IMG/VR virus record: IMGVR_UViG_3300028666_000022
Span: 62,001-126,000 of that record
DNA length: 64,000 bases
Direction: 5' to 3' (one strand)
The notes below the pieces were generated by a model. That model saw only the letters and a program-made list of their open reading frames with translations, did not search any database and had not been told where the DNA came from. Shown in pieces: positions 3,186-36,025 of this stretch. The stretch's first letter is position 1; each line of letters opens with the position of its first letter. Made by a program: the position numbers and the translations under genes.

Positions 3186-3892
3186 ATGACACAACAAGAA
3201 CTAGATGTTTTAAAAACTTACTTATCTTATGATGAAATCAAAGAGATATGTATTGAAGAATGCAGAAGATTAGTAAGAGAAGGTGTGAATAGTATCAAAC
3301 CAGATAAAAGAATTGACAATTATGAAAGAATTATTTCAAATGCTGTTCACTACTATCTTGAAACTGAAATAGATCAAATACTTGATGTTAATACAAAAGA
3401 ATTAATCAAATCAAATGTATTAAATATTTTAACAAAACCAGAATTTACAAAATATTCTATTTTTAGAACTAAAAATTCTTGGGATAATGAGGATTCTATT
3501 GGAACTAAATATCTTAAAGAAGCAGTTACAGAAAATAAAAATTATATAAAAGAAAAAGTTAAATCCGTAATTGAAGAAATTGATTTTAATAATCTTAAAG
3601 AAGATATTAAAGAATATATTCTTGAAGTTATTGATGAAAAATTTAGTAAATCACTAAAATAAACAACATTATGATTGGTATTGAATTTACATTTAATGAT
3701 GGAACAAAGGACAATTATGATCCCATTAATTTTCCTGATGATTTCGAAGAAACTAATAAAGAATATATTTTACATATGGTGTATGATTATGTAATTGAGA
3801 AATCAATAGTAAAAAGTATTCGACATTATGAATTATGCCCTATTTGTGGTCATGAATTGTATGAAGACGGTTGTCACAATTATCATGAATAA
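3186..3892 (+). CDS. Two hypothetical proteins (3186..3662; 3671..3892 with CxxC)
   Basis: ORF track. Confidence 0.6.
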
Positions 3893-4081
3893 AAAATTTT
3901 TCTAATTTATGTGGTTTATTTAAATAGTTTTAATATATTTACAAAATTTATTTTAACCTAAATAATAGAAAGGAAATTTGTGATGGAAGAAAATATTTGG
4001 AGTGAACTAAGATACGAAGAAACTGCTGAAAATATTGTTAATATTTTTGCTTGACTAACAGGTGAACTCGATGAAATTGGA
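3885..4081 (+). repeat. Diverged ~200-bp direct duplication flanking the IS607-like element (partner 6165-6359)
   Basis: The same intergenic region (atgaataaaa...tttaatatatttacaaaa...aatagaaaggaaa) and gene 5' end occur on both sides. Confidence 0.8.
3983..4081 (+). pseudogene. Truncated 5' copy of ORF 6261..6479, ending at the TnpB element right end
   Basis: MEENIWSELRYEETAENIVNIFA*LTGELDEIG vs MDENIWSELRYEETGENIINIFGWLTGELDETG; TGA at 4052-4054. Confidence 0.9.
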
Positions 4082-4190
4082 ACAGTACAAAATAATATAA
4101 TAATATTACTTCTTTATGATCGAAACCATTGGCGATACTGCAATCACCTCTATCCCATTATCAAACTCGATGTTTGGAATTGCTTTTCTT
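4082..4190 (-). ncRNA. omegaRNA scaffold overlapping the tnpB 3' end; predicted guide TCCAATTTCATCGAGTTCAC
   Basis: Hairpins ATTCCA/TGGGAT, GGTGAT/ATCGCC and ATGGT-TTCG-ATCAT; loop GCAGTA can pair with terminal TACTGT. Confidence 0.7.
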
Positions 4191-5440
4191 AATATATTTA
4201 AACTCCCGTTTAAATCTGCATTTATCAATTTCTTTGATTTTGATCTATATAAACCCCTATAAATTCTTCTACCACTAAATTTATGTTTATTAATATCATT
4301 GTCTTCAATACCAATATTATTATTTTCACATTTTTTATCTTTCTTTTTATACACTGGTATCTCATCTTCATCTATAAAACTAGCCTTACTCGTATAACTT
4401 TCTTCCTGTATTAAGACATTTATACCAAGTAATTTAGCCTTATATTCTAACATCCATATAAACCTACTGTGTGGTATGCCTACAAATTTTTGATTACTCT
4501 CCTTGCCCATATTTATCTCTTGCTTCCACTCCTTATTATTACCAATTATTAAGGTATTAATATTGTTGTCAACTAAATGATTAATAATATATCGACTTGC
4601 TTTATGCAAATAATCATCAACTTTGTTATTCCTTTTATTTGTTAAATTCTTAATTCTATTGCTTGTCCCATATTGTTGTTTTTCTCCTTTCTTATTTATA
4701 TAATGATTTAAATCTGATTTGTAATGAGCTAAATTTTTATTATAATATTGATTAATACTTTTTAATGGTTTACCATTAATAATTATTGATTTAATTACAT
4801 TACTACCTATTGTTGCTAAATTATTTAAACCCAAATCAATACTAGCATACCTATTATTATTTGGCTTTAACTCAACTTCTTTTACTTCATATAATACTTC
4901 AATTACATAATGATTACCTTTTGGTATTACTCTACATTGCTTAATATTTTTAGAATTTATTTTAGTTTTAACCCTAATATTAGTTCTCGATAATTTAACT
5001 ATATTATTTTTTAATTCTTTTTTCGATATAGCATCTAATGTATAAATCAACATAAATCTACCATTTATCTTATCTTTATAATTGGGTAATTCAGGCTTAC
5101 CTTTATATTTAGATTTATTTTTATTATAATCCTTAATAGAAGCAAAGAAAGATTTCCAATTTTTATCTAATTGCATTAGGGTTTGATTTGATATTTTTCT
5201 AGGTAATTGTATATAATCAATATCATTAGAATCAATCATTAATCTATTAATATCATAATAATTTAAATAATTAGCATGATCAACTAAACCTAATTTTTTC
5301 TCATTACTTGTTTTAATAAATTCTTGTCTGATTATATAATTAGCTTTATTGTAAAGGTTTTTACTAAGAAAACATAGTTTATCAATTTCAATAAAATATT
5401 GATTAGATTTTTTAATTATATGTTTTTCTGTTAAAATCAC
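4106..5440 (-). CDS. tnpB: RNA-guided endonuclease TnpB (IS607-associated; rearranged RuvC-II type)
   Basis: SIDLGLNNL (RuvC-I); IIGNN with downstream QEESYTSK; INADLNGSLNI (RuvC-III). Confidence 0.92.
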   Translation of the reverse strand: MILTEKHIIKKSNQYFIEIDKLCFLSKNLYNKANYIIRQEFIKTSNEKKLGLVDHANYLNYYDINRLMIDSNDIDYIQLPRKISNQTLMQLDKNWKSFFASIKDYNKNKSKYKGKPELPNYKDKINGRFMLIYTLDAISKKELKNNIVKLSRTNIRVKTKINSKNIKQCRVIPKGNHYVIEVLYEVKEVELKPNNNRYASIDLGLNNLATIGSNVIKSIIINGKPLKSINQYYNKNLAHYKSDLNHYINKKGEKQQYGTSNRIKNLTNKRNNKVDDYLHKASRYIINHLVDNNINTLIIGNNKEWKQEINMGKESNQKFVGIPHSRFIWMLEYKAKLLGINVLIQEESYTSKASFIDEDEIPVYKKKDKKCENNNIGIEDNDINKHKFSGRRIYRGLYRSKSKKLINADLNGSLNILRKAIPNIEFDNGIEVIAVSPMVSIIKK

Positions 5441-5479
5441 TTTAAATTATTAATGTTATTAAATTATATTTTACTTATT

Positions 5480-6058
5480 TTAGTTTTCAATGAATTGTTT
5501 TATTTCTTCCTTATTCTTCTTTCTCCTTAAGCCATATATCCTTTCTGAAAATGAATAAAATATACTAATTAAATCATTTAGTAAATCTTCTTTATCTTCA
5601 TTTACTTGATTTATTACTAATATTTGTTTTCCTTTTAACTTAAGTAATAATTCAATATAATTAAAACCAAATCTTGTTAATCTATCTTTATTTTCAACAA
5701 TAATCATATTCCAATCATCTCTAACCAATATTTTATTTAATTTAGGACGATTATCATTCATACCTGAAGCAATTTCTTTAATTTCATCAATAATGATATA
5801 CGCATTTTTTGTTGCAAAATCACGTATTCTATTTAATTGATTATCCAATTCTAATTTCTTGTCATTATTAGAAACTCTAGCATATAAAATTACATTGGTT
5901 TGATTATTAATTTCAGGAAATAAGGGTATTTTAACATGGTTGGTTTCATCTAAGAAAGCACCTTTAATTTTACCAGCAACAAATCTATTCCAAGCTGTTT
6001 TATAAGTAACTGAATTTTCTCTTGCATATTCGGATAATTTTTTATATATTTGTTTCAT
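5480..6058 (-). CDS. tnpA: IS607 transposase (HTH + serine recombinase)
   Basis: N-terminal HTH, ILYARVS, EIASG, VENKDRLTRFGF, FSERIYGLR. Confidence 0.92.
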   Translation of the reverse strand: MKQIYKKLSEYARENSVTYKTAWNRFVAGKIKGAFLDETNHVKIPLFPEINNQTNVILYARVSNNDKKLELDNQLNRIRDFATKNAYIIIDEIKEIASGMNDNRPKLNKILVRDDWNMIIVENKDRLTRFGFNYIELLLKLKGKQILVINQVNEDKEDLLNDLISIFYSFSERIYGLRRKKNKEEIKQFIEN

Positions 6059-6260
6059 GAATAAAATGTTTTATATTTGTATATATAAATACTATTAATG
6101 TAGAAAAAGTTTATATAAATTTCAATAATTTTACATATTAATTATAATTAGTTTAAAATATGTAATGAATAAAATTTATAATTAATGTGTTTTAATTTAA
6201 AAATTTTTAATATATTTACAAAAATTATTTTAATTTAAACAATAGAAAGGAAAGTGAGTC

Positions 6261-6479
6261 ATGGATGAGAATATTTGGTCAGAATTACGTTATGAAGAAA
6301 CTGGTGAAAATATTATTAATATTTTTGGTTGGTTAACAGGCGAACTAGATGAAACAGGAATTGCTATTATTGAAATCAATGTTTTAACTGGTTTTGTAAC
6401 TTATCTTGATGAAAGAGCTAAAGACGATTTATACGCTCAGGAAGCAGTTCAAGAAGTTTTTGATATTTACGGTTTATAA
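6261..6479 (+). CDS. Hypothetical protein (intact copy of the gene truncated at 3983-4081)
   Basis: ORF track; paralog alignment. Confidence 0.8.
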   Translation: MDENIWSELRYEETGENIINIFGWLTGELDETGIAIIEINVLTGFVTYLDERAKDDLYAQEAVQEVFDIYGL

Positions 6480-9592: not shown

Positions 9593-9813
9593 TAACCGAC
9601 AAAGATTTAAAATTAATGTATCATTCAGATACTGGTAAAAACAACACAAACAGATATATTATTAGTTGTTGTGATGGAAGTGAAGATAGTGTTTGTGATG
9701 CTACAATTACAAATGAAGATACGCGGATAACCGATACTGAAATTACTACATATTCCGATGAGTATGTTTTATTTTTAGAAAACAAATTACTTGAATACTT
9801 AAATAAAGATTAA
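9589..9813 (+). CDS. Small hypothetical protein, paralog 1
   Basis: MITDKDL..DTG...YVLFLENKLLE. Confidence 0.7.
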   Translation: MITDKDLKLMYHSDTGKNNTNRYIISCCDGSEDSVCDATITNEDTRITDTEITTYSDEYVLFLENKLLEYLNKD

Positions 9814-9814
9814 T

Positions 9815-9964
9815 ATGTTAACTGAAAGAGACTTACATAGAGAATTTAAACGAGATACCGGAATTGGTGATGTTATTGCAGTATTTTATGATAATACAGA
9901 TAAAATATATAATAGTAATTATGTTAAGTATCTTGAAAATAGATTACTTGAGTTATTAAAATAA
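9815..9964 (+). CDS. Small hypothetical protein, paralog 2 (49 aa, not in the ORF track)
   Basis: MLTEKDLHREFKRDTG...YVKYLENRLLELLK*; shares both termini with 9589..9813. Confidence 0.7.
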   Translation: MLTERDLHREFKRDTGIGDVIAVFYDNTDKIYNSNYVKYLENRLLELLK

Positions 9965-10351
9965 TAATTTTTCAAATCAAGAACATAATTGTGATTATTA
10001 CACATATTCTGAAGATGGGAATCGAAGATGGTGTACTGATTGTGGAAAAGAAGATATTGGTTTTTAATGTTAAATTAAAAAATTTATAATAATGGGATTA
10101 CACTGGTTTTACTTAAAATATACATATAGATTCAATAATAAAATATTTTTTGTTAGTAAAAGATTAAGAATATTTACTGCTGGTGGTAATCCTACTTTTA
10201 GGTGGATACCTAACATTTGTTATGGTTATTATAAACATTGGGGGTTAACTAACTGTTACGAAAATCTTTAACAATCTTACACCAGATTTAACAATAATTA
10301 ACATAAATTTAACATAAAAAGTGAGTTTTTTATAAAAATAAAACTATATAT

Positions 10352-10570
10352 ATGAAAAAGAAGTTTAATAAAATTATGGAAGATTTAAAAAATAAAAATC
10401 TAATTGTTGTTCGAGTTAATAAAATAGAATTTGAATTAGATAATGGAGATATTTATCCTATCCCATTCGAATTAGATGTTGATGAAAATATTACTCTCGA
10501 AGAATTTCAAAAAATATTAAATGATTCAAAAGATGATATTATAAAAATACTTGATAAATATAATGAGTAA
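10352..10570 (+). CDS. Small protein upstream of tnpA, inside the element
   Basis: ORF overlapping the tnpA start. Confidence 0.6.
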   Translation: MKKKFNKIMEDLKNKNLIVVRVNKIEFELDNGDIYPIPFELDVDENITLEEFQKILNDSKDDIIKILDKYNE

Positions 10571-11189
10571 ACTATTATCATTACAAAAAGTATCAGAAAT
10601 ATTGGGTGTAACTAAGAAAACATTAAGAATATGGGATAATGATGGTAAATTAGTTAGTATTAAAACTATTGGTGGTCATAGAAGATATAAAGAAGATGAT
10701 GTTAATAAATACATCGGTGAATATGTTGAAGTTAATATTAATAATGTTTTAACATATAGTAGAGTAAGTAGTCATGAACAAAAAACCAAAGGAGATTTAG
10801 ATAGACAATCACAAAGAATAAGTGAATATTGTGCTAAGAAAAAATACAAAGTAGAATATATTATTAAAGATGTTGGTTCAGGACTATCAGATACAAGAAG
10901 TGGATTTGTTAAAATGGTTGATTTGGTAATTAAGAGAAAAATTAATAAAGTAATCATTGAAAATAAAGATAGATTAACCAGATTTCAATTTAATTTAATT
11001 AAAGTATTTTTTAATAGTTATGATGTGGAAATTGAATGTATTGAAAATACGAATATATCAAATGAAGAAGAATTTGTAAATGATATAATGATGTTAATGG
11101 CAAGTTTTTCTGGTAAATTATATGGTAAGAGAAGTGTGAAACGTAAAAAAGAATTAAAAGAACAAAAATTAAAAGATAAAAATTTTTAA
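10551..11189 (+). CDS. tnpA: IS607 transposase (MerR-like HTH + serine recombinase)
   Basis: LGVTKKTLRIWD...GGHRRY, YSRVSS, DVGSGL, ENKDRLTRF, SFSGKLYG. Confidence 0.93.
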   Translation: MINIMSKLLSLQKVSEILGVTKKTLRIWDNDGKLVSIKTIGGHRRYKEDDVNKYIGEYVEVNINNVLTYSRVSSHEQKTKGDLDRQSQRISEYCAKKKYKVEYIIKDVGSGLSDTRSGFVKMVDLVIKRKINKVIIENKDRLTRFQFNLIKVFFNSYDVEIECIENTNISNEEEFVNDIMMLMASFSGKLYGKRSVKRKKELKEQKLKDKNF

Positions 11190-11205
11190 AACGATACTAA
11201 TTATT

Positions 11206-12003
11206 ATGAAATTAATTCAGAAATATTTAAAAACCGATGATGAGATTGAATTATTAAGAGAGAGTAATTTATTAGTATCAAAAACACTTGCAGAAATTGC
11301 TAAAAATATAAAAGTTGGCGTTTCTACACTTTATCTTGATAAAATTGCTGAAGAGTTTATTATGGATAATAATGCAATACCTGCTTTTAAAGGATATAAT
11401 GGATTTCCAAATACATTATGTACATCAGTAAATGATGAAATAATTCATGGAATTCCATCTGATTATATTTTGAATGAAGGTGATATAATATCGGTTGATT
11501 GTGGTGTGATATTAAATGGATGGTATGGAGATAGTGCTTATACGTTTCCTGTTGGTAAAATTTCAAAGGAAATACTGCAATTATTGGTATATACTAAAGA
11601 ATCTCTTAAAGAAGGAATAAAAAAAGCAATCATAGGAAATAGAATTGGTGATATTTCTTATGCAGTTCAAACTAAAGTAGAAAGTGGTGGATATAGTGTT
11701 GTAAGAGAAATGGTTGGTCACGGTATTGGAAGAAATCTTCATGAAGAACCTAATATTCCAAATTATGGTAAGCAAGGAACGGGAATAAAACTTGAAAAGG
11801 GACTTGTAATATGTATTGAACCAATGATAAATCTTGGAAAAAGAGAAATGTTGTTAATGAAGGATGGATGGACAATAAAAACTGCTGATGGAAAACCTTC
11901 AGCACATTTCGAAAAAGCAATTGTGATTCACAAAGAAAAAGCAGATATATTAACAAATTTTGATTTTATTGAAAAAATTTTAGATAATAATGAAAATAAT
12001 TAG
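11206..12003 (+). CDS. map: Type I methionine aminopeptidase
   Basis: CTSVNDEIIHGIP, SVDCG, GDSAYT, GHGIG..HEEP, CIEPM, SAHFE. Confidence 0.95.
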   Translation: MKLIQKYLKTDDEIELLRESNLLVSKTLAEIAKNIKVGVSTLYLDKIAEEFIMDNNAIPAFKGYNGFPNTLCTSVNDEIIHGIPSDYILNEGDIISVDCGVILNGWYGDSAYTFPVGKISKEILQLLVYTKESLKEGIKKAIIGNRIGDISYAVQTKVESGGYSVVREMVGHGIGRNLHEEPNIPNYGKQGTGIKLEKGLVICIEPMINLGKREMLLMKDGWTIKTADGKPSAHFEKAIVIHKEKADILTNFDFIEKILDNNENN

Positions 12004-13126
12004 GTCAACTAAATGTAGTTTGAAGTTTTCTACTAAAAAGAAAATAAATGATTTGTCAACTATATTAGCAGAATATGCTAAAGTGGTTAATATTTTCATA
12101 AATTATTTTTGGTTAAATCCTGACAATACAAATAAAAATAAATTATTAAAAGAAATAGTTGATTTACCTTCAGAAACATGGTTGAGTGCAAGATTAAGAA
12201 AAGTGGCAGCAAGAGAAGCGATTGATATGATAAATGCATCTAAATTAAGATGGAAAAATAAAGCAGTAATTCCTGTTCATAAAGGAAATAGGATGTATGT
12301 TAGTTGTACCATTGCTGACTTAGTTCCTACTAAAAACACTAATTATAAAACTGAAGAAAGTCTTAGATTCGATGCTTGGTTGCATATACAATCAATTGGA
12401 AATAAAATGATAATGGATTTACCAATTAAATATCATAAACATTTTAATAAGTATAATAATATAGGTAAAAGATTAAACTCATACATAATAACAAAGAATT
12501 ACGTTCAGTTTAGTTTTGAAATTAATACACAACCTAAGAAAGAAGGTAAGAAATGTATTGGTATAGATACTGGTATTAACGCACTTGCTAGTTTGAATAA
12601 TGGTAATCAATATGGAAAAGATATTAAGGAATGTATTGAAAGAGTAAAAAGATGTCAACAAAAATCAAAAGGATGGTATGTTGCTAAAAGAGCATTAAAA
12701 CAGCGTATTGATGAAGTAGTAAAAGAATTAATGATAAAAGAGAATCCTGATTTAATAGTTGTGGAACGACTAAAGAATATGGGAGTTAAATCAAAAGCCA
12801 AACGTTTATTGGCTAAAAATATTAGACGTTCTATTGGAACATGGAACTGGAAGTATTGGTTAAAAAGGTTAGAAGGATATTGCGAAATTAACCGTGTTAG
12901 TTTTCGTTCGGTATTACCTTATTATACCAGTACAACTTGTCCTGTATGTGGTCATTCTGATAGGGGAAACCGAAATGGAAAGATATTCTTATGTCTTAAA
13001 TGTGAACACAAAGACAATGCTGATATAAATGCAGGAAAGAATATTTTAAATCGGTTTCTTATGGGACTCTACGGTGTCCATTACAAAGAATGTGAAGATG
13101 TACAATTTTGTGCAACTTTAGTTTAA
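11990..13126 (+). CDS. tnpB: RNA-guided endonuclease TnpB
   Basis: GIDTG, VVERL, TSTTCPVC...CLKC zinc ribbon, NADINAGKNI. Confidence 0.9.
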   Translation: MKIIRSTKCSLKFSTKKKINDLSTILAEYAKVVNIFINYFWLNPDNTNKNKLLKEIVDLPSETWLSARLRKVAAREAIDMINASKLRWKNKAVIPVHKGNRMYVSCTIADLVPTKNTNYKTEESLRFDAWLHIQSIGNKMIMDLPIKYHKHFNKYNNIGKRLNSYIITKNYVQFSFEINTQPKKEGKKCIGIDTGINALASLNNGNQYGKDIKECIERVKRCQQKSKGWYVAKRALKQRIDEVVKELMIKENPDLIVVERLKNMGVKSKAKRLLAKNIRRSIGTWNWKYWLKRLEGYCEINRVSFRSVLPYYTSTTCPVCGHSDRGNRNGKIFLCLKCEHKDNADINAGKNILNRFLMGLYGVHYKECEDVQFCATLV

Positions 13127-13522
13127 CGGTCATTCACTTTAAGATAATAAAATGAAAAAGAATAGAATTATACCTTATGTTCCTCCAAAAGATAGATGTG
13201 TAATATCTGAAGGAAATAATAAAAAATTATCATATAAATATATTATGAACGAAAAACACATAATGATTGAAGATACTGGATGCTGGGTATACAAACTACC
13301 TAATTTCATTAGTAAATATTTTGTTAAAACATACACTATTCAAGGTGCTGTTTATGTTAAGAAACATGGAATTGATGAGAAACCCGTATTTTATTCAGAT
13401 ACAATAAAAGGACTAGAAATACTTAAAATTATATCAACTTCTGAAAAAAGAGCAGATAAACTATCGTTTGAATATTACAATAAAAAATATCCACAATATG
13501 GTGAATTTATTAAATTCATAAA

Positions 13523-14275
13523 ATGAATTATATGAACTACAAAATAATCTGTGATGAGCAAAAACTAATTGATTTTATCAATTGGTTACCAGAACTTCAA
13601 AATGGTGAATGTTATTATGTTTGTTTATTTTGTAGATCCAAATATGTTAAGGGTTTACCATTTACGCATATTAAGTCAGATAAACAACAATTAAAAAGAT
13701 TCACTTCAACTAAAGAATTTCTTTTTGAAAAAATTAAACAACTTGAAATTGAAGTGGGTTGTTATTATCAGAAACACACACCAATACCTCAAGAAGCACT
13801 TGCTGTTTACATTAATCCAAATCCTCGTAGTTATGAAAAAGCTGCTAAAGAAGGTCTTAAAAAGCTTGCTGAACTAATAACAAAACCATATAACGGTTAT
13901 AATCCGCATCAGGAATTAATGTCTGAAATTCAAAAAGCTTGTAGTAGAAAAATATTTTTTGATATTGACTTTGATAATGTTGAAATAGAAACAATAAGAA
14001 GAGAAGTATTGGGTTTAATTAATCCAGAATGTTTAAACTTCTTACAAACACGTGGTGGTTTTCATCTACTTATTGAGTTAGAGAAAATCGATAAATTATT
14101 TCAAAAAACTTGGTACAAAAATATTACCAGTCTTGCAGGTGCAGATATTAAAGGAGATATGGTTTTGCCTATACCGGGCACATATCAAGGTGGGTTCGTG
14201 CCTCATTTTTATGAAAAAGAAGAAAATAATATAGTAATTGATTTTGATGTTAATAACTTTTTTAATATAATATGA
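13523..14275 (+). CDS. Putative AEP (primase-polymerase) superfamily protein
   Basis: FFDIDFD (motif I-like) and QTRGGFHLL (motif II-like). Confidence 0.5.
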
Positions 14276-15777
14276 TGACATCCGAAGAAATAAAAAAAAT
14301 AATGATTGATGGTGGTTATGAATTACATAGTCATTCTGGTGATGATAAATTATTTACTTTTATAAAACATTTTAATAATAGAGGACAACATGAGCCAGAT
14401 GTTTTAAAATCAACGCATTTTATTTATTGTGAAGTTAATACTTCTAATGAATTTAGATTTACTGCAATTACAAATAGAATGTCATATTTTTTAGATTCTG
14501 GTTGGATGGGTTCTGTTGATAATGATCAACATTTCGTAACTAACGAATGTAATTTTGCTTATTATGCACGACTGATTCAAATTAATAATCCGTTTTAAAA
14601 TATATCATTAAATAAACATACTTTATATATTTTATTATTCACAGCAATTTAAAACTTAAAAAACATGGTAGCAGAGGACAGACTAACAACAGAATTTAAC
14701 TTACCTACACACGAGAATGAAATTTTTAAAGCAGAAGAGGTGCTTGAAAAGATTAGAACCAAATTTTATAAGGTTCAGTTATTAAAGAGTATTGATAATG
14801 AAACACACGAAAAACTGTATGAAGAAGCAATGAGAGTATTATATTATGTTGGCAGTTTATCAATGCCAGCATTTAATATTAGAGAAGAATTAGAAACAAA
14901 ATATACATTATTATACATAAAATCACCACAATTAGGAAAGAAGTTATTTTTAGATGATTATGAAAAGATACATTATAATTATAATATCTTAAAAGCAAGA
15001 TGCTATAGATTGCTCGATGATATTGATAAAGAATTCTTTAAAAGACACAAGAAAAGGCCAAGGAATTGGTAATAAAATATATTATTAGCATCTGTATTAT
15101 CGGATGCTTAAATTTTCTAATAATTTAAAATCATTTAATTATGAGTTATGATATTTACGGAAATAATTTAGCTCGTGGTCATTGCGAGGTTCATCCTTGG
15201 GTTGGTGAAGAATACCCTTGTTCATTATGTTATGAAGAAAACGATAAACATAATAAACAAAATAAGATATATAATCAACAAGAAAAAGATTATTACGATG
15301 CAATGGAACGAGAACATTATGATGAAATAATTAAGAAAAATTATTTTAAATATAGAATATTATGTTTCATTGTATTAATTTTACAGAATTCATTAAATCG
15401 ATTGAAAATCAAATTAGAAATGATTTATCAAAAAGAAAAACGAAAATATTAACATCATGATCCTCAAAAATAATAAAATTTTCGAGTCAATCTCTTCTGA
15501 ATTGGCTCTATTTTTAGTAAATAAAACACGTTATAAGATTTACTACGTTTTTCATTTAAATGATAATCAGCCAATGATTCTACTAACAAAAGAAAACATT
15601 GATAAATATACTGAATTACATGATGATGCTATAAATAGAAGAGTTGCTGACAATGGAATATTTCAATGTTTAGGAGAACTACCAACTTTAGTAATTAAAA
15701 CATTTTCGAATAATAAATATCCGATGCAAATCGAAAGTTTTTATGATGATTATCAGTGGCTTAATTGGTCTGAATAA
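14272..15777 (+). CDS. Hypothetical proteins (14272..14598, 14665..15072, 15141..15452, 15457..15777)
   Basis: ORF track. Confidence 0.6.
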
Positions 15778-16055: not shown

Positions 16056-16150
16056 CTAATGTTAAGAATTTTAAACGTTTCATAGATTGTGCCTATTGTT
16101 ATAGGTCTTATTTTATCTCCACGTCTGTTATCGTTAGTCCCTAACGATTG
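16027..16150 (-). ncRNA. IS200/IS605-type omegaRNA and right end; predicted guide AAATGCCTTTGTTTCTAAAC
   Basis: Ends GGTAGTTCAC; hairpins ATCGTTAG/CTAACGAT, CCTAT/ATAGG and TTCTTAAC/GTTAAGAA; GTGGA/TTCAC pseudoknot. Confidence 0.75.
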
Positions 16151-17354
16151 TAATATTATCTTTGGTATTAATAGTTTGATTTTCATTAATTAAATCATTA
16201 TTAATACCACTCTCTTTTACTTTTCTTCCTTCTTTTAAAATATTTAAGGCTGCATTTAGATCCCTGTCATGTTTCATCCCACATTTAGGACAAATCCACT
16301 CTCTTACCTTAAGAGTCAAGTTCTGGTTAATATACCCACATTCATTACATGCCTTACTTGAAGGATAAAAACGGTTTATTTTAGTGATAGTTTTATCACT
16401 CCAATTAGCTTTATATTCAAGCATGTTAATGAATTTGCCCCATGAGGCATCTGATATTGACTTATTTAATCCTGACTTAGCTGACTGACCATTAGGTAGG
16501 TATTTACCATTATCATCCTGTTTTGGTTTACAAGATTTTAACATACCTTTAATATTCAAGTCTTCTAAATAAATTTGATCATATTTTTTTATTAAATCTG
16601 TACTGATCTTATGTAAATTATCTACACGAGAATTGGTTATCTTCTTATGTATTCTCGCTACCTTTAATCTTTGTTTTTCATATCTATTACTTCCTTTAGT
16701 TTTTCTACTTAAATGTTGCTGTCCCCTTTTTAGCTTTTTCGCATATGTCTTTGTATATTTATTGTTTTTATATTTATAACCATCTGATGTAATAATTAGA
16801 TCCTTAATTCCCAAATCAATACCAACCTCTTTACCAGTTTTAGGTAACTTAACATGAGATGTTTCAACCAAAATAGAAACAAAATATTCATTAGTTGGTG
16901 TTTTAGAAACAGTGCATTGATGTATTTCACCTTTAAATTTTCTGTCAATTATAATTGGTATTCCTTCTTTAAATTTAGGTATATGTAATTTATTTTTTAT
17001 TAACTTTGTAAATTGTGGCACACAAAAACTATTTCTATCATGCTTACTCTTAAATCTTGGAAACCTTGTTCTTCCCTTAAAGAAACCATTATAAGCTCCA
17101 TCTAAACATTTAAGAGATTGTTGCATGGATTGAGAATTAGTTTCATTTAACCAAGTAAAATCATTATTTTGTTTTAGTGTGGTGAGAGATTTACAATTAT
17201 CAACATAACTTAAACCTTGTTTATTTGTTTTGTATTCTTCAATCCTTTCGTTTAAATAATAGTTATAAACAAACCTAATACACCCAAAATGTTTATTTAA
17301 TAAGATCATTTGGTTATTATCAGGTTTTAGTTTATATTTGTAAGCTTTTAACAT
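16134..17354 (-). CDS. tnpB: RNA-guided endonuclease TnpB (IS200/IS605 OrfB type), no adjacent transposase
   Basis: MLKAYKYKL..HFGCIRFVYN, GIDLG, YLEDL, PSSKACNEC...WICPKC, HDRDLNAA. Confidence 0.95.
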   Translation of the reverse strand: MLKAYKYKLKPDNNQMILLNKHFGCIRFVYNYYLNERIEEYKTNKQGLSYVDNCKSLTTLKQNNDFTWLNETNSQSMQQSLKCLDGAYNGFFKGRTRFPRFKSKHDRNSFCVPQFTKLIKNKLHIPKFKEGIPIIIDRKFKGEIHQCTVSKTPTNEYFVSILVETSHVKLPKTGKEVGIDLGIKDLIITSDGYKYKNNKYTKTYAKKLKRGQQHLSRKTKGSNRYEKQRLKVARIHKKITNSRVDNLHKISTDLIKKYDQIYLEDLNIKGMLKSCKPKQDDNGKYLPNGQSAKSGLNKSISDASWGKFINMLEYKANWSDKTITKINRFYPSSKACNECGYINQNLTLKVREWICPKCGMKHDRDLNAALNILKEGRKVKESGINNDLINENQTINTKDNITIVRD

Positions 17355-35783: not shown

Positions 35784-36025
35784 ACAGTACGTAATAACAT
35801 ATAATTTATATTAACTCTTTATGGTCGAAACCATTGGCGATACTGCAATCACCTCTATTCCATTATCAAACCGATGTTTGGAATTGCTTTTATTAGCTAT
35901 TATTTTTAATTCAACATCTAAAAGATATTGTCTTGCTAAATTGTTTAACTTTTATGATTTTACATTACCAAAGTATTAATTTAGGTAATAACCACAATAT
36001 ATCAAAGAACGTAAAGATAAATACT
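35784..36025 (-). ncRNA. Stand-alone TnpB omegaRNA cassette B; predicted guide CCATGTGTGAGATTTATTTA
   Basis: 35816-35891 matches 4111-4187 (2 substitutions + 1 loop indel); same ACAGTAC end; leader shared with cassette A. Confidence 0.8.

What the first reader, a model, noticed from the sequence alone, without database searches (positions are those of the whole stretch)
10243..13129. IS607 element with a methionine aminopeptidase between tnpA and tnpB
SEEN: a complete map gene lies 16 nt after tnpA and overlaps the tnpB start. The element has GG junctions, TTAACA left-end repeats and a left flank ending TGGGGG. KNOWN: IS607 tnpA and tnpB are normally adjacent, and IS607 recombines at a GG core. 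INFERENCE: a cargo-carrying IS607 that mobilises a host protein-maturation enzyme. Predicted guide TCATTCACTTTAAGATAATA with a G-rich TAM.
Basis: partly seen in the sequence, partly recalled or inferred. Interest (0 to 1): 0.6.

Follow-up and report, generated by a model that had tools for sequence, protein, structure and literature searches.

The report
Phage IS607 transposon carrying methionine aminopeptidase
A 2.9-kb IS607-type jumping gene in a 340-kb soil phage carries a complete, apparently working methionine aminopeptidase gene between its transposase and its RNA-guided nuclease, and its relatives in other phages hold other genes at the same spot, so this transposon lineage acts as a small gene carrier.

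Summary

More than 40 relatives in viral contigs fix both boundaries. Similarity starts at GGGTTAA and stops at TTTAACGG, and the DNA outside is unrelated between loci.

Pairs of elements share two arms, LE-orf72-tnpA and tnpB-RE, around an unrelated centre. That centre is 17-61 bp in four canonical relatives. In the others it holds small ORFs, YopX, an SF2 helicase of 720-878 aa, or a nested second IS607. Helicase-loaded copies sit at four unrelated sites, so loaded elements move as units.

map appears in this slot only here. It keeps all metal ligands, is under purifying selection (dN/dS 0.2-0.3) and matches the phage in composition (GC3 0.12). It groups with two MetAP genes on AT-rich contigs; one of these carries 12 tRNA genes. 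All three derive from the Bacteroidota housekeeping map.

"Two independent insertions" is rejected: the genome has one LE motif and one RE motif. An assembly artefact is rejected: contigs from other runs bridge every junction. Mobility of this particular copy is not shown. No second site, empty site or circle junction was found.

The parts
10237..10241 (+). Left flank next to the element (TTGG plus the first G). It is the candidate TAM-like, purine/G-rich target flank.
   Evidence: Across 17 left junctions, positions -3, -2 and -1 before GGG read T-R-R. Published IS607 TAMs are AGGAG or GAGGG (PMC11061315). The TAM itself was not tested.
10242..10351 (+). Left end (LE). It begins GGGTTAAC, with the GG crossover core at 10242-10243 or 10243-10244, and holds TTAAC(A) repeats at 10245, 10268, 10288, 10298 and 10309.
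   Evidence: Similarity with relatives starts exactly here and the upstream flanks are unrelated. Repeat enrichment has P about 4e-6. This is the only LE motif in the genome.
10352..10570 (+). orf72, a conserved accessory gene of this IS607 lineage with unknown function. It overlaps the tnpA start by 8 nt.
   Evidence: It is present upstream of tnpA in at least 17 relatives at 50-75% identity. The AF2 model has pLDDT 86.5 and a helix, three strands, helix layout. There is no Pfam, PHROG or PDB fold match.
10563..11189 (+). tnpA, an IS607-type serine recombinase transposase of 208 aa from the ATG (212 aa from the TTG at 10551).
   Evidence: NF033518 at 181.7 bits (cut-off 110). HTH_17/MerR at residues 8-55 and Resolvase at 67-205. 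A YSRVSS serine motif is present.
11181..11986 (+). Cargo cassette: the segment with no counterpart in related elements. It is essentially the map ORF plus a few upstream nucleotides.
   Evidence: Whole-element blastn gives arms at 1-939 and 1745-2888, with the centre unmatched. The 84% nucleotide match to the map genes of L009 and L010 covers 11194-11987 only.
11206..12003 (+). map, a type I methionine aminopeptidase of 265 aa.
   Evidence: TIGR00500 at 315 bits. PDB 1o0x matches at E 2.6e-63. The metal-ligand motifs (ISVDCG, YGDSA, VGHGIG, IEPM, AHFE) and IHGIP are intact. dN/dS is 0.21-0.29 and GC3 is 0.117.
11990..13126 (+). tnpB, an RNA-guided-nuclease family protein of 378 aa.
   Evidence: PF07282 at 52.4 bits and NF040570 at 95.5 bits. 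RuvC-like motifs are GIDTG (D193), IVVERL (E259) and NADINA (D345), with two CxxC pairs.
12870..13129 (+). Candidate omega-RNA scaffold. It overlaps the tnpB 3' end and runs to the right end.
   Evidence: RNAalifold on 32 relatives gives 48 pairs, 15 of them with compensatory double changes. There is no Rfam match, including RAGATH-18. This is inferred and overlaps coding sequence.
13122..13129 (+). Right end terminus, TTTAACGG, ending in the GG core.
   Evidence: AACGG is invariant in all 32 aligned relatives (two further loci read AACGA) and downstream flanks are unrelated. This is the only RE motif on this strand in the genome.
13130..13149 (+). Predicted guide-matching flank, TCATTCACTTTAAGATAATA. 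It lies in the 22-nt leader of the next gene, whose ATG is at 13152.
   Evidence: The prediction rests on position only. By analogy with IS605 and IS607 TnpB, the guide is transcribed from the DNA just past the RE (PMC13565253). The first base is T in nearly all right junctions examined, so it may belong to the element or to the target preference.

Best explanation
Window 10242-13129 is a single, structurally intact element of a phage-restricted IS607 lineage. Its order is LE, orf72, tnpA, cargo slot, tnpB with its omega-RNA, RE. In this copy the slot holds a type I methionine aminopeptidase gene.

How it probably works (inferred from IS607 biology): TnpA, a serine recombinase, binds the TTAAC(A) repeats. 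It excises and integrates everything between the two GG cores through a circular double-stranded intermediate. The expected circle junction is TTAAC-GG-GTTAA.

TnpB, guided by an RNA that ends in the right-flank sequence, would then cut the vacated or naive site. Recombination with an occupied genome copy would restore or spread the element. Any gene in the slot, here map, would be copied along with it.

The MetAP gene descends from the Bacteroidota housekeeping map. It probably reached the element from another large phage's genome, not straight from the host chromosome. It most likely works as a phage-supplied N-terminal methionine excision enzyme, reducing dependence on host MetAP.

Shown: the gene identities, the boundaries, the two-arm modular structure, the variable slot, the mobility of loaded relatives, and the integrity and constraint of map.

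Inferred: current mobility of this copy, the guide and TAM, the homing step, and the benefit of MetAP.
For: - Gene calls.
- Boundaries: similarity starts at GGGTTAA at 17 left junctions. It ends at AACGG at 32 right junctions. Flanks are unrelated. tblastx of 1.2-1.5 kb flanks of 14 elements finds almost nothing shared.
- One element, not two: there is one LE motif and one RE motif in 339,898 bp.
- Modular structure: whole-element blastn shows two homologous arms around an unrelated centre. L013 and L045 are 94% and 88.5% identical in their arms but have slots of 0.45 and 2.8 kb.
- Slot sizes: 17-61 bp in L035, L040, L042 and L072, where tnpA overlaps or abuts tnpB. The slot is 265 bp to 2.9 kb in 16 other distinct loci.
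- Slot contents: an SF2 helicase in L017, L018, L019 and L045, each at a different site. YopX in L012 and L020. A nested tnpA plus tnpB in L012.
- Slot edges: similarity on the tnpB side begins within a few nt of the ATG in all loci. The tnpA-side breakpoints scatter over the last ~20 codons.
- Internal control: the same phage has a canonical IS607 with a 39-nt tnpA-tnpB gap at 4106-6058.
- MetAP integrity: the metal ligands are intact. dN/dS is 0.21-0.29 and GC3 is 0.117, against 0.31-0.42 in bacterial homologues.
- MetAP origin: it forms a clade with P0002 and P0003 at SH-aLRT 100. L009 holds 12 tRNA genes with map directly after tRNA-Thr. Bacterial relatives at 73-77% identity lie in secY-map-infA.
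- Assembly: every junction is bridged by contigs from other runs.
- Host MetAP matters to phages: it is needed by some phages to complete the lytic cycle (PMC6761271).
Against: - Only one insertion site of the map-loaded element is known. A junction-pattern scan of metagenome contigs returned only the source contig. A MetAP scan of viral contigs found no other copy. Exact-protein look-ups show only this context.
- No empty site was found. No excision or circle joint appears in contigs. These are contigs at 3-7x depth, so this is weak negative evidence.
- No close relative of the phage exists for a synteny test.
- TnpB scores just under the NCBIfam cut-off and is remote from any solved TnpB.
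- The RNA covariation lies within coding sequence.
- The MetAP branch is 4-5 times longer than its two nearest relatives. That could reflect relaxed constraint.
Confidence: 0.8

Rival explanations
1. The element is a fixed, no longer mobile remnant. tnpA, map and tnpB persist as ordinary phage genes, and map is simply a phage accessory gene that happens to lie between them.
For: The genome holds a single copy. Every sample shows the same context. No empty site or circle junction was seen.
Against: All three element ORFs are intact with their catalytic motifs. Both termini match the family consensus, including the GG. The LE repeats are intact. Loaded relatives sit at unrelated sites. Two relatives with a mutated terminus (AACGA: L021, L051) show what decay looks like, and this copy lacks it.
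Confidence: 0.3
2. map is a resident phage gene bracketed by two independent insertions: a tnpA-only element upstream and a tnpB-only element downstream.
For: tnpB-only derivatives of this family exist, for example L028 with an LE-like sequence directly before tnpB. Other phage-like contigs carry map without any IS.
Against: No RE lies between tnpA and map and no LE lies between map and tnpB. Each motif occurs once in the genome, at the outer ends. The cassette fills exactly the gap between the arms, the position where relatives carry other cargo or nothing. tnpA and tnpB of this type co-occur in one unit in more than 20 loci.
Confidence: 0.03
3. The tnpA-map-tnpB order is an assembly chimera of a metagenome contig.
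For: The source is a metagenome assembly. One ENA contig starts at 10244 and another ends at 12011.
Against: Contigs from four other runs and three ENA samples bridge the LE, tnpA-map, map-tnpB and RE junctions with no mismatches.
Confidence: 0.01
4. The MetAP homologue is an inactive or repurposed passenger, for example a decoy or binding protein, rather than a working aminopeptidase.
For: Its branch is long, 0.31 against 0.06-0.09 for its nearest relatives. dN/dS is two to three times that of bacterial pairs. The phage encodes no peptide deformylase.
Against: All five metal ligands and the conserved His are retained. The full-length alignment to solved MetAPs has E 2.6e-63. dN/dS remains well below 1.
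Confidence: 0.15

Closest known systems
Canonical IS607 / IS1535 family insertion sequences (Helicobacter pylori, Mycobacterium tuberculosis)
   Same: They share a serine-recombinase TnpA with an N-terminal MerR-like HTH, and a TnpB downstream. They have no terminal inverted repeats and no target duplication. Their ends terminate in GG, they carry sub-terminal repeats, and they insert next to G-rich sequence (PMC13565253).
   Different: The family is described as encoding two proteins. This lineage has a conserved third gene (orf72) and a variable slot between tnpA and tnpB, filled here by map. The lineage is almost confined to viral contigs: 4 hits in about 185,000 species genomes, all on MAG contigs.
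IS607 TnpB with RAGATH-18-derived reRNA (ISFba1 type; PMC11061315)
   Same: The TnpB is of similar size (378 vs 387 aa) with a RuvC D-E-D triad and a zinc finger. The TAM is G-rich (AGGAG or GAGGG) and the guide comes from the right flank.
   Different: There the reRNA lies wholly downstream of the ORF. Here tnpB stops 3 nt before the element end, so any scaffold must overlap coding sequence. No RAGATH-18 match was found. Only the C-terminal 80-150 residues align to solved TnpB or Cas12f structures.
IS elements with passenger genes (transporter IS, tIS) and unit transposons
   Same: A transposase-defined element carries genes unrelated to transposition within its ends.
   Different: I found no report of an IS607-family member with a recurrent cargo position between tnpA and tnpB (searches, which cover only the held library). 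The cargo here is phage-type genes rather than resistance genes.
IStrons (IS605/IS607 elements fused to a group I intron; 10.1101/2023.11.20.567912)
   Same: They are another case of IS607/IS605 elements that gained an extra functional module while keeping tnpA, tnpB and the omega-RNA.
   Different: The extra module there is a self-splicing intron at the left end that serves the element. Here it is protein-coding cargo between tnpA and tnpB.
Phage-encoded peptide deformylase (cyanophage PDF; PMC3660681)
   Same: It is a host-derived N-terminal protein-processing enzyme carried by a phage as an auxiliary gene.
   Different: The enzyme is PDF rather than MetAP, and it is not inside a transposon. 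This phage has no PDF.

Membership tests
IS607 family insertion sequence | Transposase is a serine recombinase with an N-terminal MerR-like HTH and a C-terminal catalytic domain | tested here: met
   NF033518 at 181.7 bits against a cut-off of 110. HTH_17/MerR at residues 8-55 and PF00239 at residues 67-205.
IS607 family insertion sequence | Accessory tnpB (RuvC-type RNA-guided nuclease family) downstream of tnpA on the same strand | tested here: met
   PF07282 at 52.4 bits against 26.3. NF040570 at 95.5 bits, just below its cut-off of 100. D193, E259 and D345 motifs and two CxxC pairs are present.
IS607 family insertion sequence | Ends terminate in GG, with no terminal inverted repeats and no target-site duplication | tested here: met
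   The LE starts GGG and the RE ends AACGG in all 32 aligned relatives. Flanks are unrelated and no duplication is seen.
IS607 family insertion sequence | Sub-terminal repeated motifs at the ends (TnpA binding sites) | tested here: met
   Five TTAAC(A) copies lie in the 110-nt LE at 10-20 nt spacing (P about 4e-6). Two lie in the last 260 nt. Binding itself was not tested.
IS607 family insertion sequence | Compact two-gene content (tnpA and tnpB only, adjacent) | tested here: not met
   The element has four genes, with orf72 and map as extras. tnpA and tnpB are 800 nt apart. Canonical relatives and the phage's second IS607 do meet this feature.
IS607 family insertion sequence | Transposition through a circular double-stranded intermediate | not testable with these tools
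   Only Logan contigs were available and they show no circle or empty-site joint. Raw deep reads or PCR are needed.
Type I methionine aminopeptidase (M24A) | Pita-bread fold family match over the full length, above the curated cut-off | tested here: met
   TIGR00500 at 315.2 bits against 171.35. PF00557 at 150 bits. PDB 1o0x at E 2.6e-63 over residues 8-251.
Type I methionine aminopeptidase (M24A) | Two Asp, one His and two Glu metal ligands, plus the conserved substrate His | tested here: met
   The motifs ISVDCG, YGDSA, VGHGIG, IEPM, AHFE and IHGIP align with those of the T. maritima enzyme. Residue roles come from established MetAP knowledge.
Type I methionine aminopeptidase (M24A) | Catalytic activity on N-terminal Met | not testable with these tools
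   This needs an enzyme assay or complementation.
RAGATH-18 / IS607 reRNA | Match to the Rfam covariance model downstream of tnpB | tested here: not met
   No such hit at E <= 1 in 9800-13500. Only 3 nt lie between the tnpB stop and the element end.

The most novel reading that the evidence does not exclude
A phage-restricted IS607 lineage has turned the tnpA-tnpB junction into a general cargo slot. Through TnpA transposition and TnpB/omega-RNA-guided homing between co-infecting genomes, it would act as an RNA-guided gene-drive carrier. It would spread accessory genes such as MetAP, an SF2 helicase and YopX among large phages. The conserved orf72 would be a new element-encoded regulator.
Probability: 0.35. 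Interest if true: 0.8.

Novelty: new variant of a known kind. Interest (0 to 1): 0.62.

Why it matters
IS607 elements are treated as minimal two-gene units. Here a whole lineage living in phage genomes keeps a third conserved gene and swaps cargo at one fixed internal position.

If TnpB-guided homing works in these phages, any gene in the slot gets a transmission advantage that does not depend on its benefit to the phage. That would be a simple route for moving host-derived genes between unrelated phages.

The MetAP passenger is of interest in itself. Host MetAP is required by some phages (PMC6761271), so a phage-borne copy could make the phage independent of it.

The family also offers many natural variants (TnpB of 364-381 aa) with exactly defined ends for testing guide and TAM rules.

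Tried and rejected
- MetAP-pattern scan of viral contigs for other map-bearing copies: none.
- Degenerate pattern across the map-3'/tnpB-5' junction in metagenome contigs: only the source contig.
- Empty-site pattern in viral contigs: none.
- Synteny test for an empty site: the neighbouring 250-aa gene has only two distant relatives, with no other shared genes, so no test was possible.
- blastn of the region against GenBank phages: only two short, weak hits.
- Contigs from public runs: they support all junctions but show no excision or circle joint. The three listed joints have sides of 20-40 nt and do not match the element boundaries, so I treat them as spurious. Only contigs were on offer, not raw reads.
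- Rfam: no RNA family match, only a sub-threshold S15 leader hit that I take as chance.
- Sigma-70 promoter and terminator scan: no more sites than in shuffled sequence, so uninformative.
- orf72: no Pfam, NCBIfam or PHROG match and no PDB fold match at E <= 0.001.
- Most slot ORFs of relatives: no family match.
- The count of structure pairs control for the RNA fold: not run, because it needs a 286-character typed structure string.
- Careful tree search: it did not finish in the time allowed, so the quick IQ-TREE result is what I report.
Full report
**Context.** The window is bases 62001-126000 of a 339,898-bp IMG/VR virus record with direct terminal repeats. It was assembled from a rhizosphere metagenome and has about 25% G+C throughout. 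It is a jumbo phage genome. Its MetAP is closest to Bacteroidales and Bacteroidia proteins, which points to a Bacteroidota host. That host assignment is an inference.

**The observation.** ORF listing and family scans confirm four co-directional genes.
- orf72 lies at 10352-10570 and has no family match.
- tnpA lies at 10563-11189. It scores 181.7 bits on the IS607 transposase model NF033518 (cut-off 110). An HTH_17/MerR domain sits in front of a resolvase catalytic domain.
- map lies at 11206-12003 and scores 315 bits on TIGR00500 type I MetAP.
- tnpB lies at 11990-13126. It matches PF07282 above cut-off and NF040570 at 95.5 bits, just under its cut-off of 100.
- The left flank ends CATTGG and is followed by GGGTTAAC. 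The left end holds five TTAAC(A) repeats against about 0.2 expected (P about 4e-6). The right end reads TTTAACGG, 3 nt after the tnpB stop.

**Boundaries from relatives.** TnpB and TnpA queries found 41 and 24 loci in viral contigs, at 47-89% protein identity.
- At 17 left junctions, similarity begins at GGGT(T/A)(A/T)... and what lies upstream is unrelated.
- At 32 right junctions it ends at AACGG. The next base is T in nearly all loci, and everything after that is unrelated.
- tblastx of 1.2-1.5 kb flanks from 14 elements finds almost nothing shared.
- This is therefore a real mobile element family.
- The inferred circle junction, TTAAC-GG-GTTAA, is an inverted repeat around a GG core. This matches the published rule that IS607 elements end in GG and integrate at GG (PMC13565253).
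- Which two of the three G's form the crossover core cannot be told from sequence.

**One element, not two.** The LE motif and the RE motif each occur once in the whole genome on the relevant strand, at the outer ends. No RE follows tnpA and no LE precedes tnpB.

Whole-element blastn shows a consistent pattern. There is a left arm (LE-orf72-tnpA, about 940 bp) and a right arm (tnpB-RE, about 1140 bp), each 73-94% identical between elements. Between them lies an unrelated centre. In the window the unmatched centre is 11181-11986, which is essentially the map ORF.

The same phage carries a second, canonical IS607 from a different lineage at 4106-6058 on the minus strand. Its tnpA and tnpB are 39 nt apart.

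**A cargo slot across the lineage.** Among distinct loci that hold both genes, the distance from the tnpA stop to the tnpB ATG falls into several classes.
- It is 17-61 bp in L035, L040, L042 and L072. In L035 and L040, tnpA overlaps tnpB.
- It is 265-490 bp with small ORFs in L013, L023, L027, L029, L037 and L041.
- It is 600-845 bp in L020, L022, L026, L030 and L064.
- It is 2.7-2.9 kb in L012, L017, L018, L019 and L045.

All principal slot ORFs run in the element's direction. The contents identified are as follows.
- An SF2 helicase (ResIII plus Helicase_C, 720-878 aa) with a 147-164-aa ORF in L017, L018, L019 and L045.
- YopX in L012 and L020.
- A complete second tnpA plus tnpB nested in L012.
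- A weak homing-endonuclease-like match in L022.
- ORFs of unknown function in the other loci.

Two further points bear on how the slot behaves.
- The four helicase-loaded elements lie at four unrelated sites. Loaded elements therefore move as units.
- L023 and L048 keep only the first codons of the helicase after tnpA. This shows that cargo is also lost.

The slot edges look like this. On the tnpB side, similarity begins within a few nt of the ATG in every locus. On the tnpA side, breakpoints scatter over the last ~20 codons. That pattern fits selection for insertions that spare both genes. It does not require a site-specific loading mechanism. How cargo is loaded is unknown.

**The MetAP passenger.** No relative carries map in the slot. 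Pattern searches found no second map-loaded copy.
- The protein aligns over its full length to solved type I MetAPs (1o0x, E 2.6e-63). It keeps the five metal-ligand motifs and the conserved His.
- The nearest proteins are P0002 (81%) and P0003 (79%), on AT-rich contigs L010 and L009. The nucleotide identity there is 84% and is confined to 11194-11987.
- L009 holds 12 tRNA genes in 4.8 kb, with map directly after tRNA-Thr. L010 has the same tRNA-Thr pair upstream of map. This looks like a large-phage translation module with no IS parts.
- The next relatives (73-77%) are bacterial. Two that I examined lie in the ribosomal-protein operon between secY and infA.
- In a quick maximum-likelihood tree of 120 proteins, the three AT-rich copies form one side of a branch with SH-aLRT 100. 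The window copy has a long branch, 0.31. The tree is midpoint-rooted and the careful search did not finish.
- dN/dS against L009 and L010 is 0.29 and 0.21, compared with 0.07-0.13 in the comparisons that involve the bacterial copies. GC3 is 0.117, against 0.31-0.42 in the bacterial genes.
- So map is a constrained, long-resident, phage-adapted gene. It probably came into the element from a phage genome.
- The phage has no peptide deformylase.
- Host MetAP is needed by some Streptococcus phages at a late step of infection (PMC6761271). That gives a plausible benefit for a phage-borne copy.

**TnpB and guide RNA.**
- The protein keeps the GIDTG, IVVERL and NADINA motifs and two CxxC pairs. The two Asp motifs and the CxxC pairs are also kept in nearly all relatives.
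- Only its C-terminal part aligns to solved TnpB or Cas12f structures.
- The last 260 nt of 32 elements give an RNAalifold consensus of 48 pairs, 15 with compensatory double changes. This fits an omega-RNA scaffold that overlaps the tnpB 3' end, but the region is coding and I did not run the shuffling control.
- No Rfam family matches. This differs from RAGATH-18-type IS607 TnpBs, whose RNA lies downstream of the ORF (PMC11061315).
- Left flanks read T-R-R before GGG. This is compatible with the published G-rich TAMs AGGAG and GAGGG. The TAM remains a prediction.

**Is this copy mobile?** All genes and both termini are intact. Two relatives (L021, L051) have AACGA at the terminus, which shows what decay looks like.

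Direct evidence of mobility is still missing. Contigs from four other runs bridge each junction with no mismatches, and ENA and JGI contigs show only this context. There is no empty site, circle junction or second site. Those data are low-depth contigs, so the absence carries little weight.

**Distribution and literature.** The TnpB family gave only four hits in about 185,000 species genomes, all on MAG contigs. One of these has the same length (33,155 bp) and match coordinates as a viral contig in IMG/VR. The lineage therefore appears to live in phages.

Reviews describe IS607 as a two-protein element (PMC13565253). Full-text searches for IS607 with "passenger" or "cargo" found no report of a cargo position between tnpA and tnpB. 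Those searches cover only the held library.

**Verdict.** Mobility of this copy is inferred. map was probably captured from a phage genome. The passenger is one instance of a lineage-wide cargo slot, and that slot is the more interesting finding.

Noticed in passing
window 3885-6360 (minus-strand element, tnpB2 4106-5440, tnpA2 5480-6058): A second, canonical IS607 of another lineage (TnpA 36% identical to tnpA1). It is bracketed by direct repeats of about 200 nt at 82% identity (3885-4082 and 6165-6360). That is unexpected for a serine-recombinase element, which makes no target duplication.
   Followed up: partly
window 35784-35895: An orphan copy (89% over 113 nt) of the last ~90 nt of tnpB2 plus the adjacent right end of the second IS607. 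It may be a solo right end or guide-RNA remnant.
   Followed up: partly
window 16134-17354 (-) and genome C1:14871-15920 (+): Two further full-length TnpB genes of about 406 aa with an HTH_OrfB_IS605 domain and no adjacent tnpA. The phage has four tnpB genes in all.
   Followed up: no
window 10352-10570; L012-L072 upstream of tnpA: orf72 is conserved in at least 17 related elements (core EFELxxGD..P..F) and overlaps the tnpA start. Its confident AF2 model (helix, three strands, helix) has no PDB match. It could be an element regulator, by analogy with Arc in IS605 elements (10.64898/2026.09.24.754181).
   Followed up: partly
L012:2341-4118: A different IS607 (tnpA 36% identical, tnpB with an HTH_OrfB domain) is nested inside the cargo slot of an element of this lineage, next to YopX and small ORFs.
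   Followed up: partly
L028:4960-5000: An LE-like sequence (GGGGCTTATTAACAGTTAAC) lies directly before the tnpB ATG with no tnpA. This looks like a tnpA-less derivative of the family.
   Followed up: no
L021 and L051 right ends: The terminus reads AACGA instead of the otherwise invariant AACGG. These are probably decayed copies.
   Followed up: no
L007 (ENA contig) = window 10244-14518; L008 ends at window 12011: One independent assembly contig starts 2 nt inside the left end and another stops 22 nt into tnpB. Contig breaks at element landmarks may hint at population heterogeneity, but this cannot be tested without reads.
   Followed up: no
L009:135-3705: This AT-rich contig has 12 tRNA genes in 3.6 kb, followed by map and a small membrane-protein ORF. 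It suggests that MetAP belongs to a translation-related module in another large phage.
   Followed up: partly
L083-L086 (genome contigs): The only genome hits of this TnpB family are on contigs binned into MAGs: Saccharofermentanales, an 'uncultured archaeon', and Candidatus Vampirococcus lugosii. At least one has the same length and match coordinates as an IMG/VR viral contig, so these are probably phage contigs mis-binned into MAGs.
   Followed up: no
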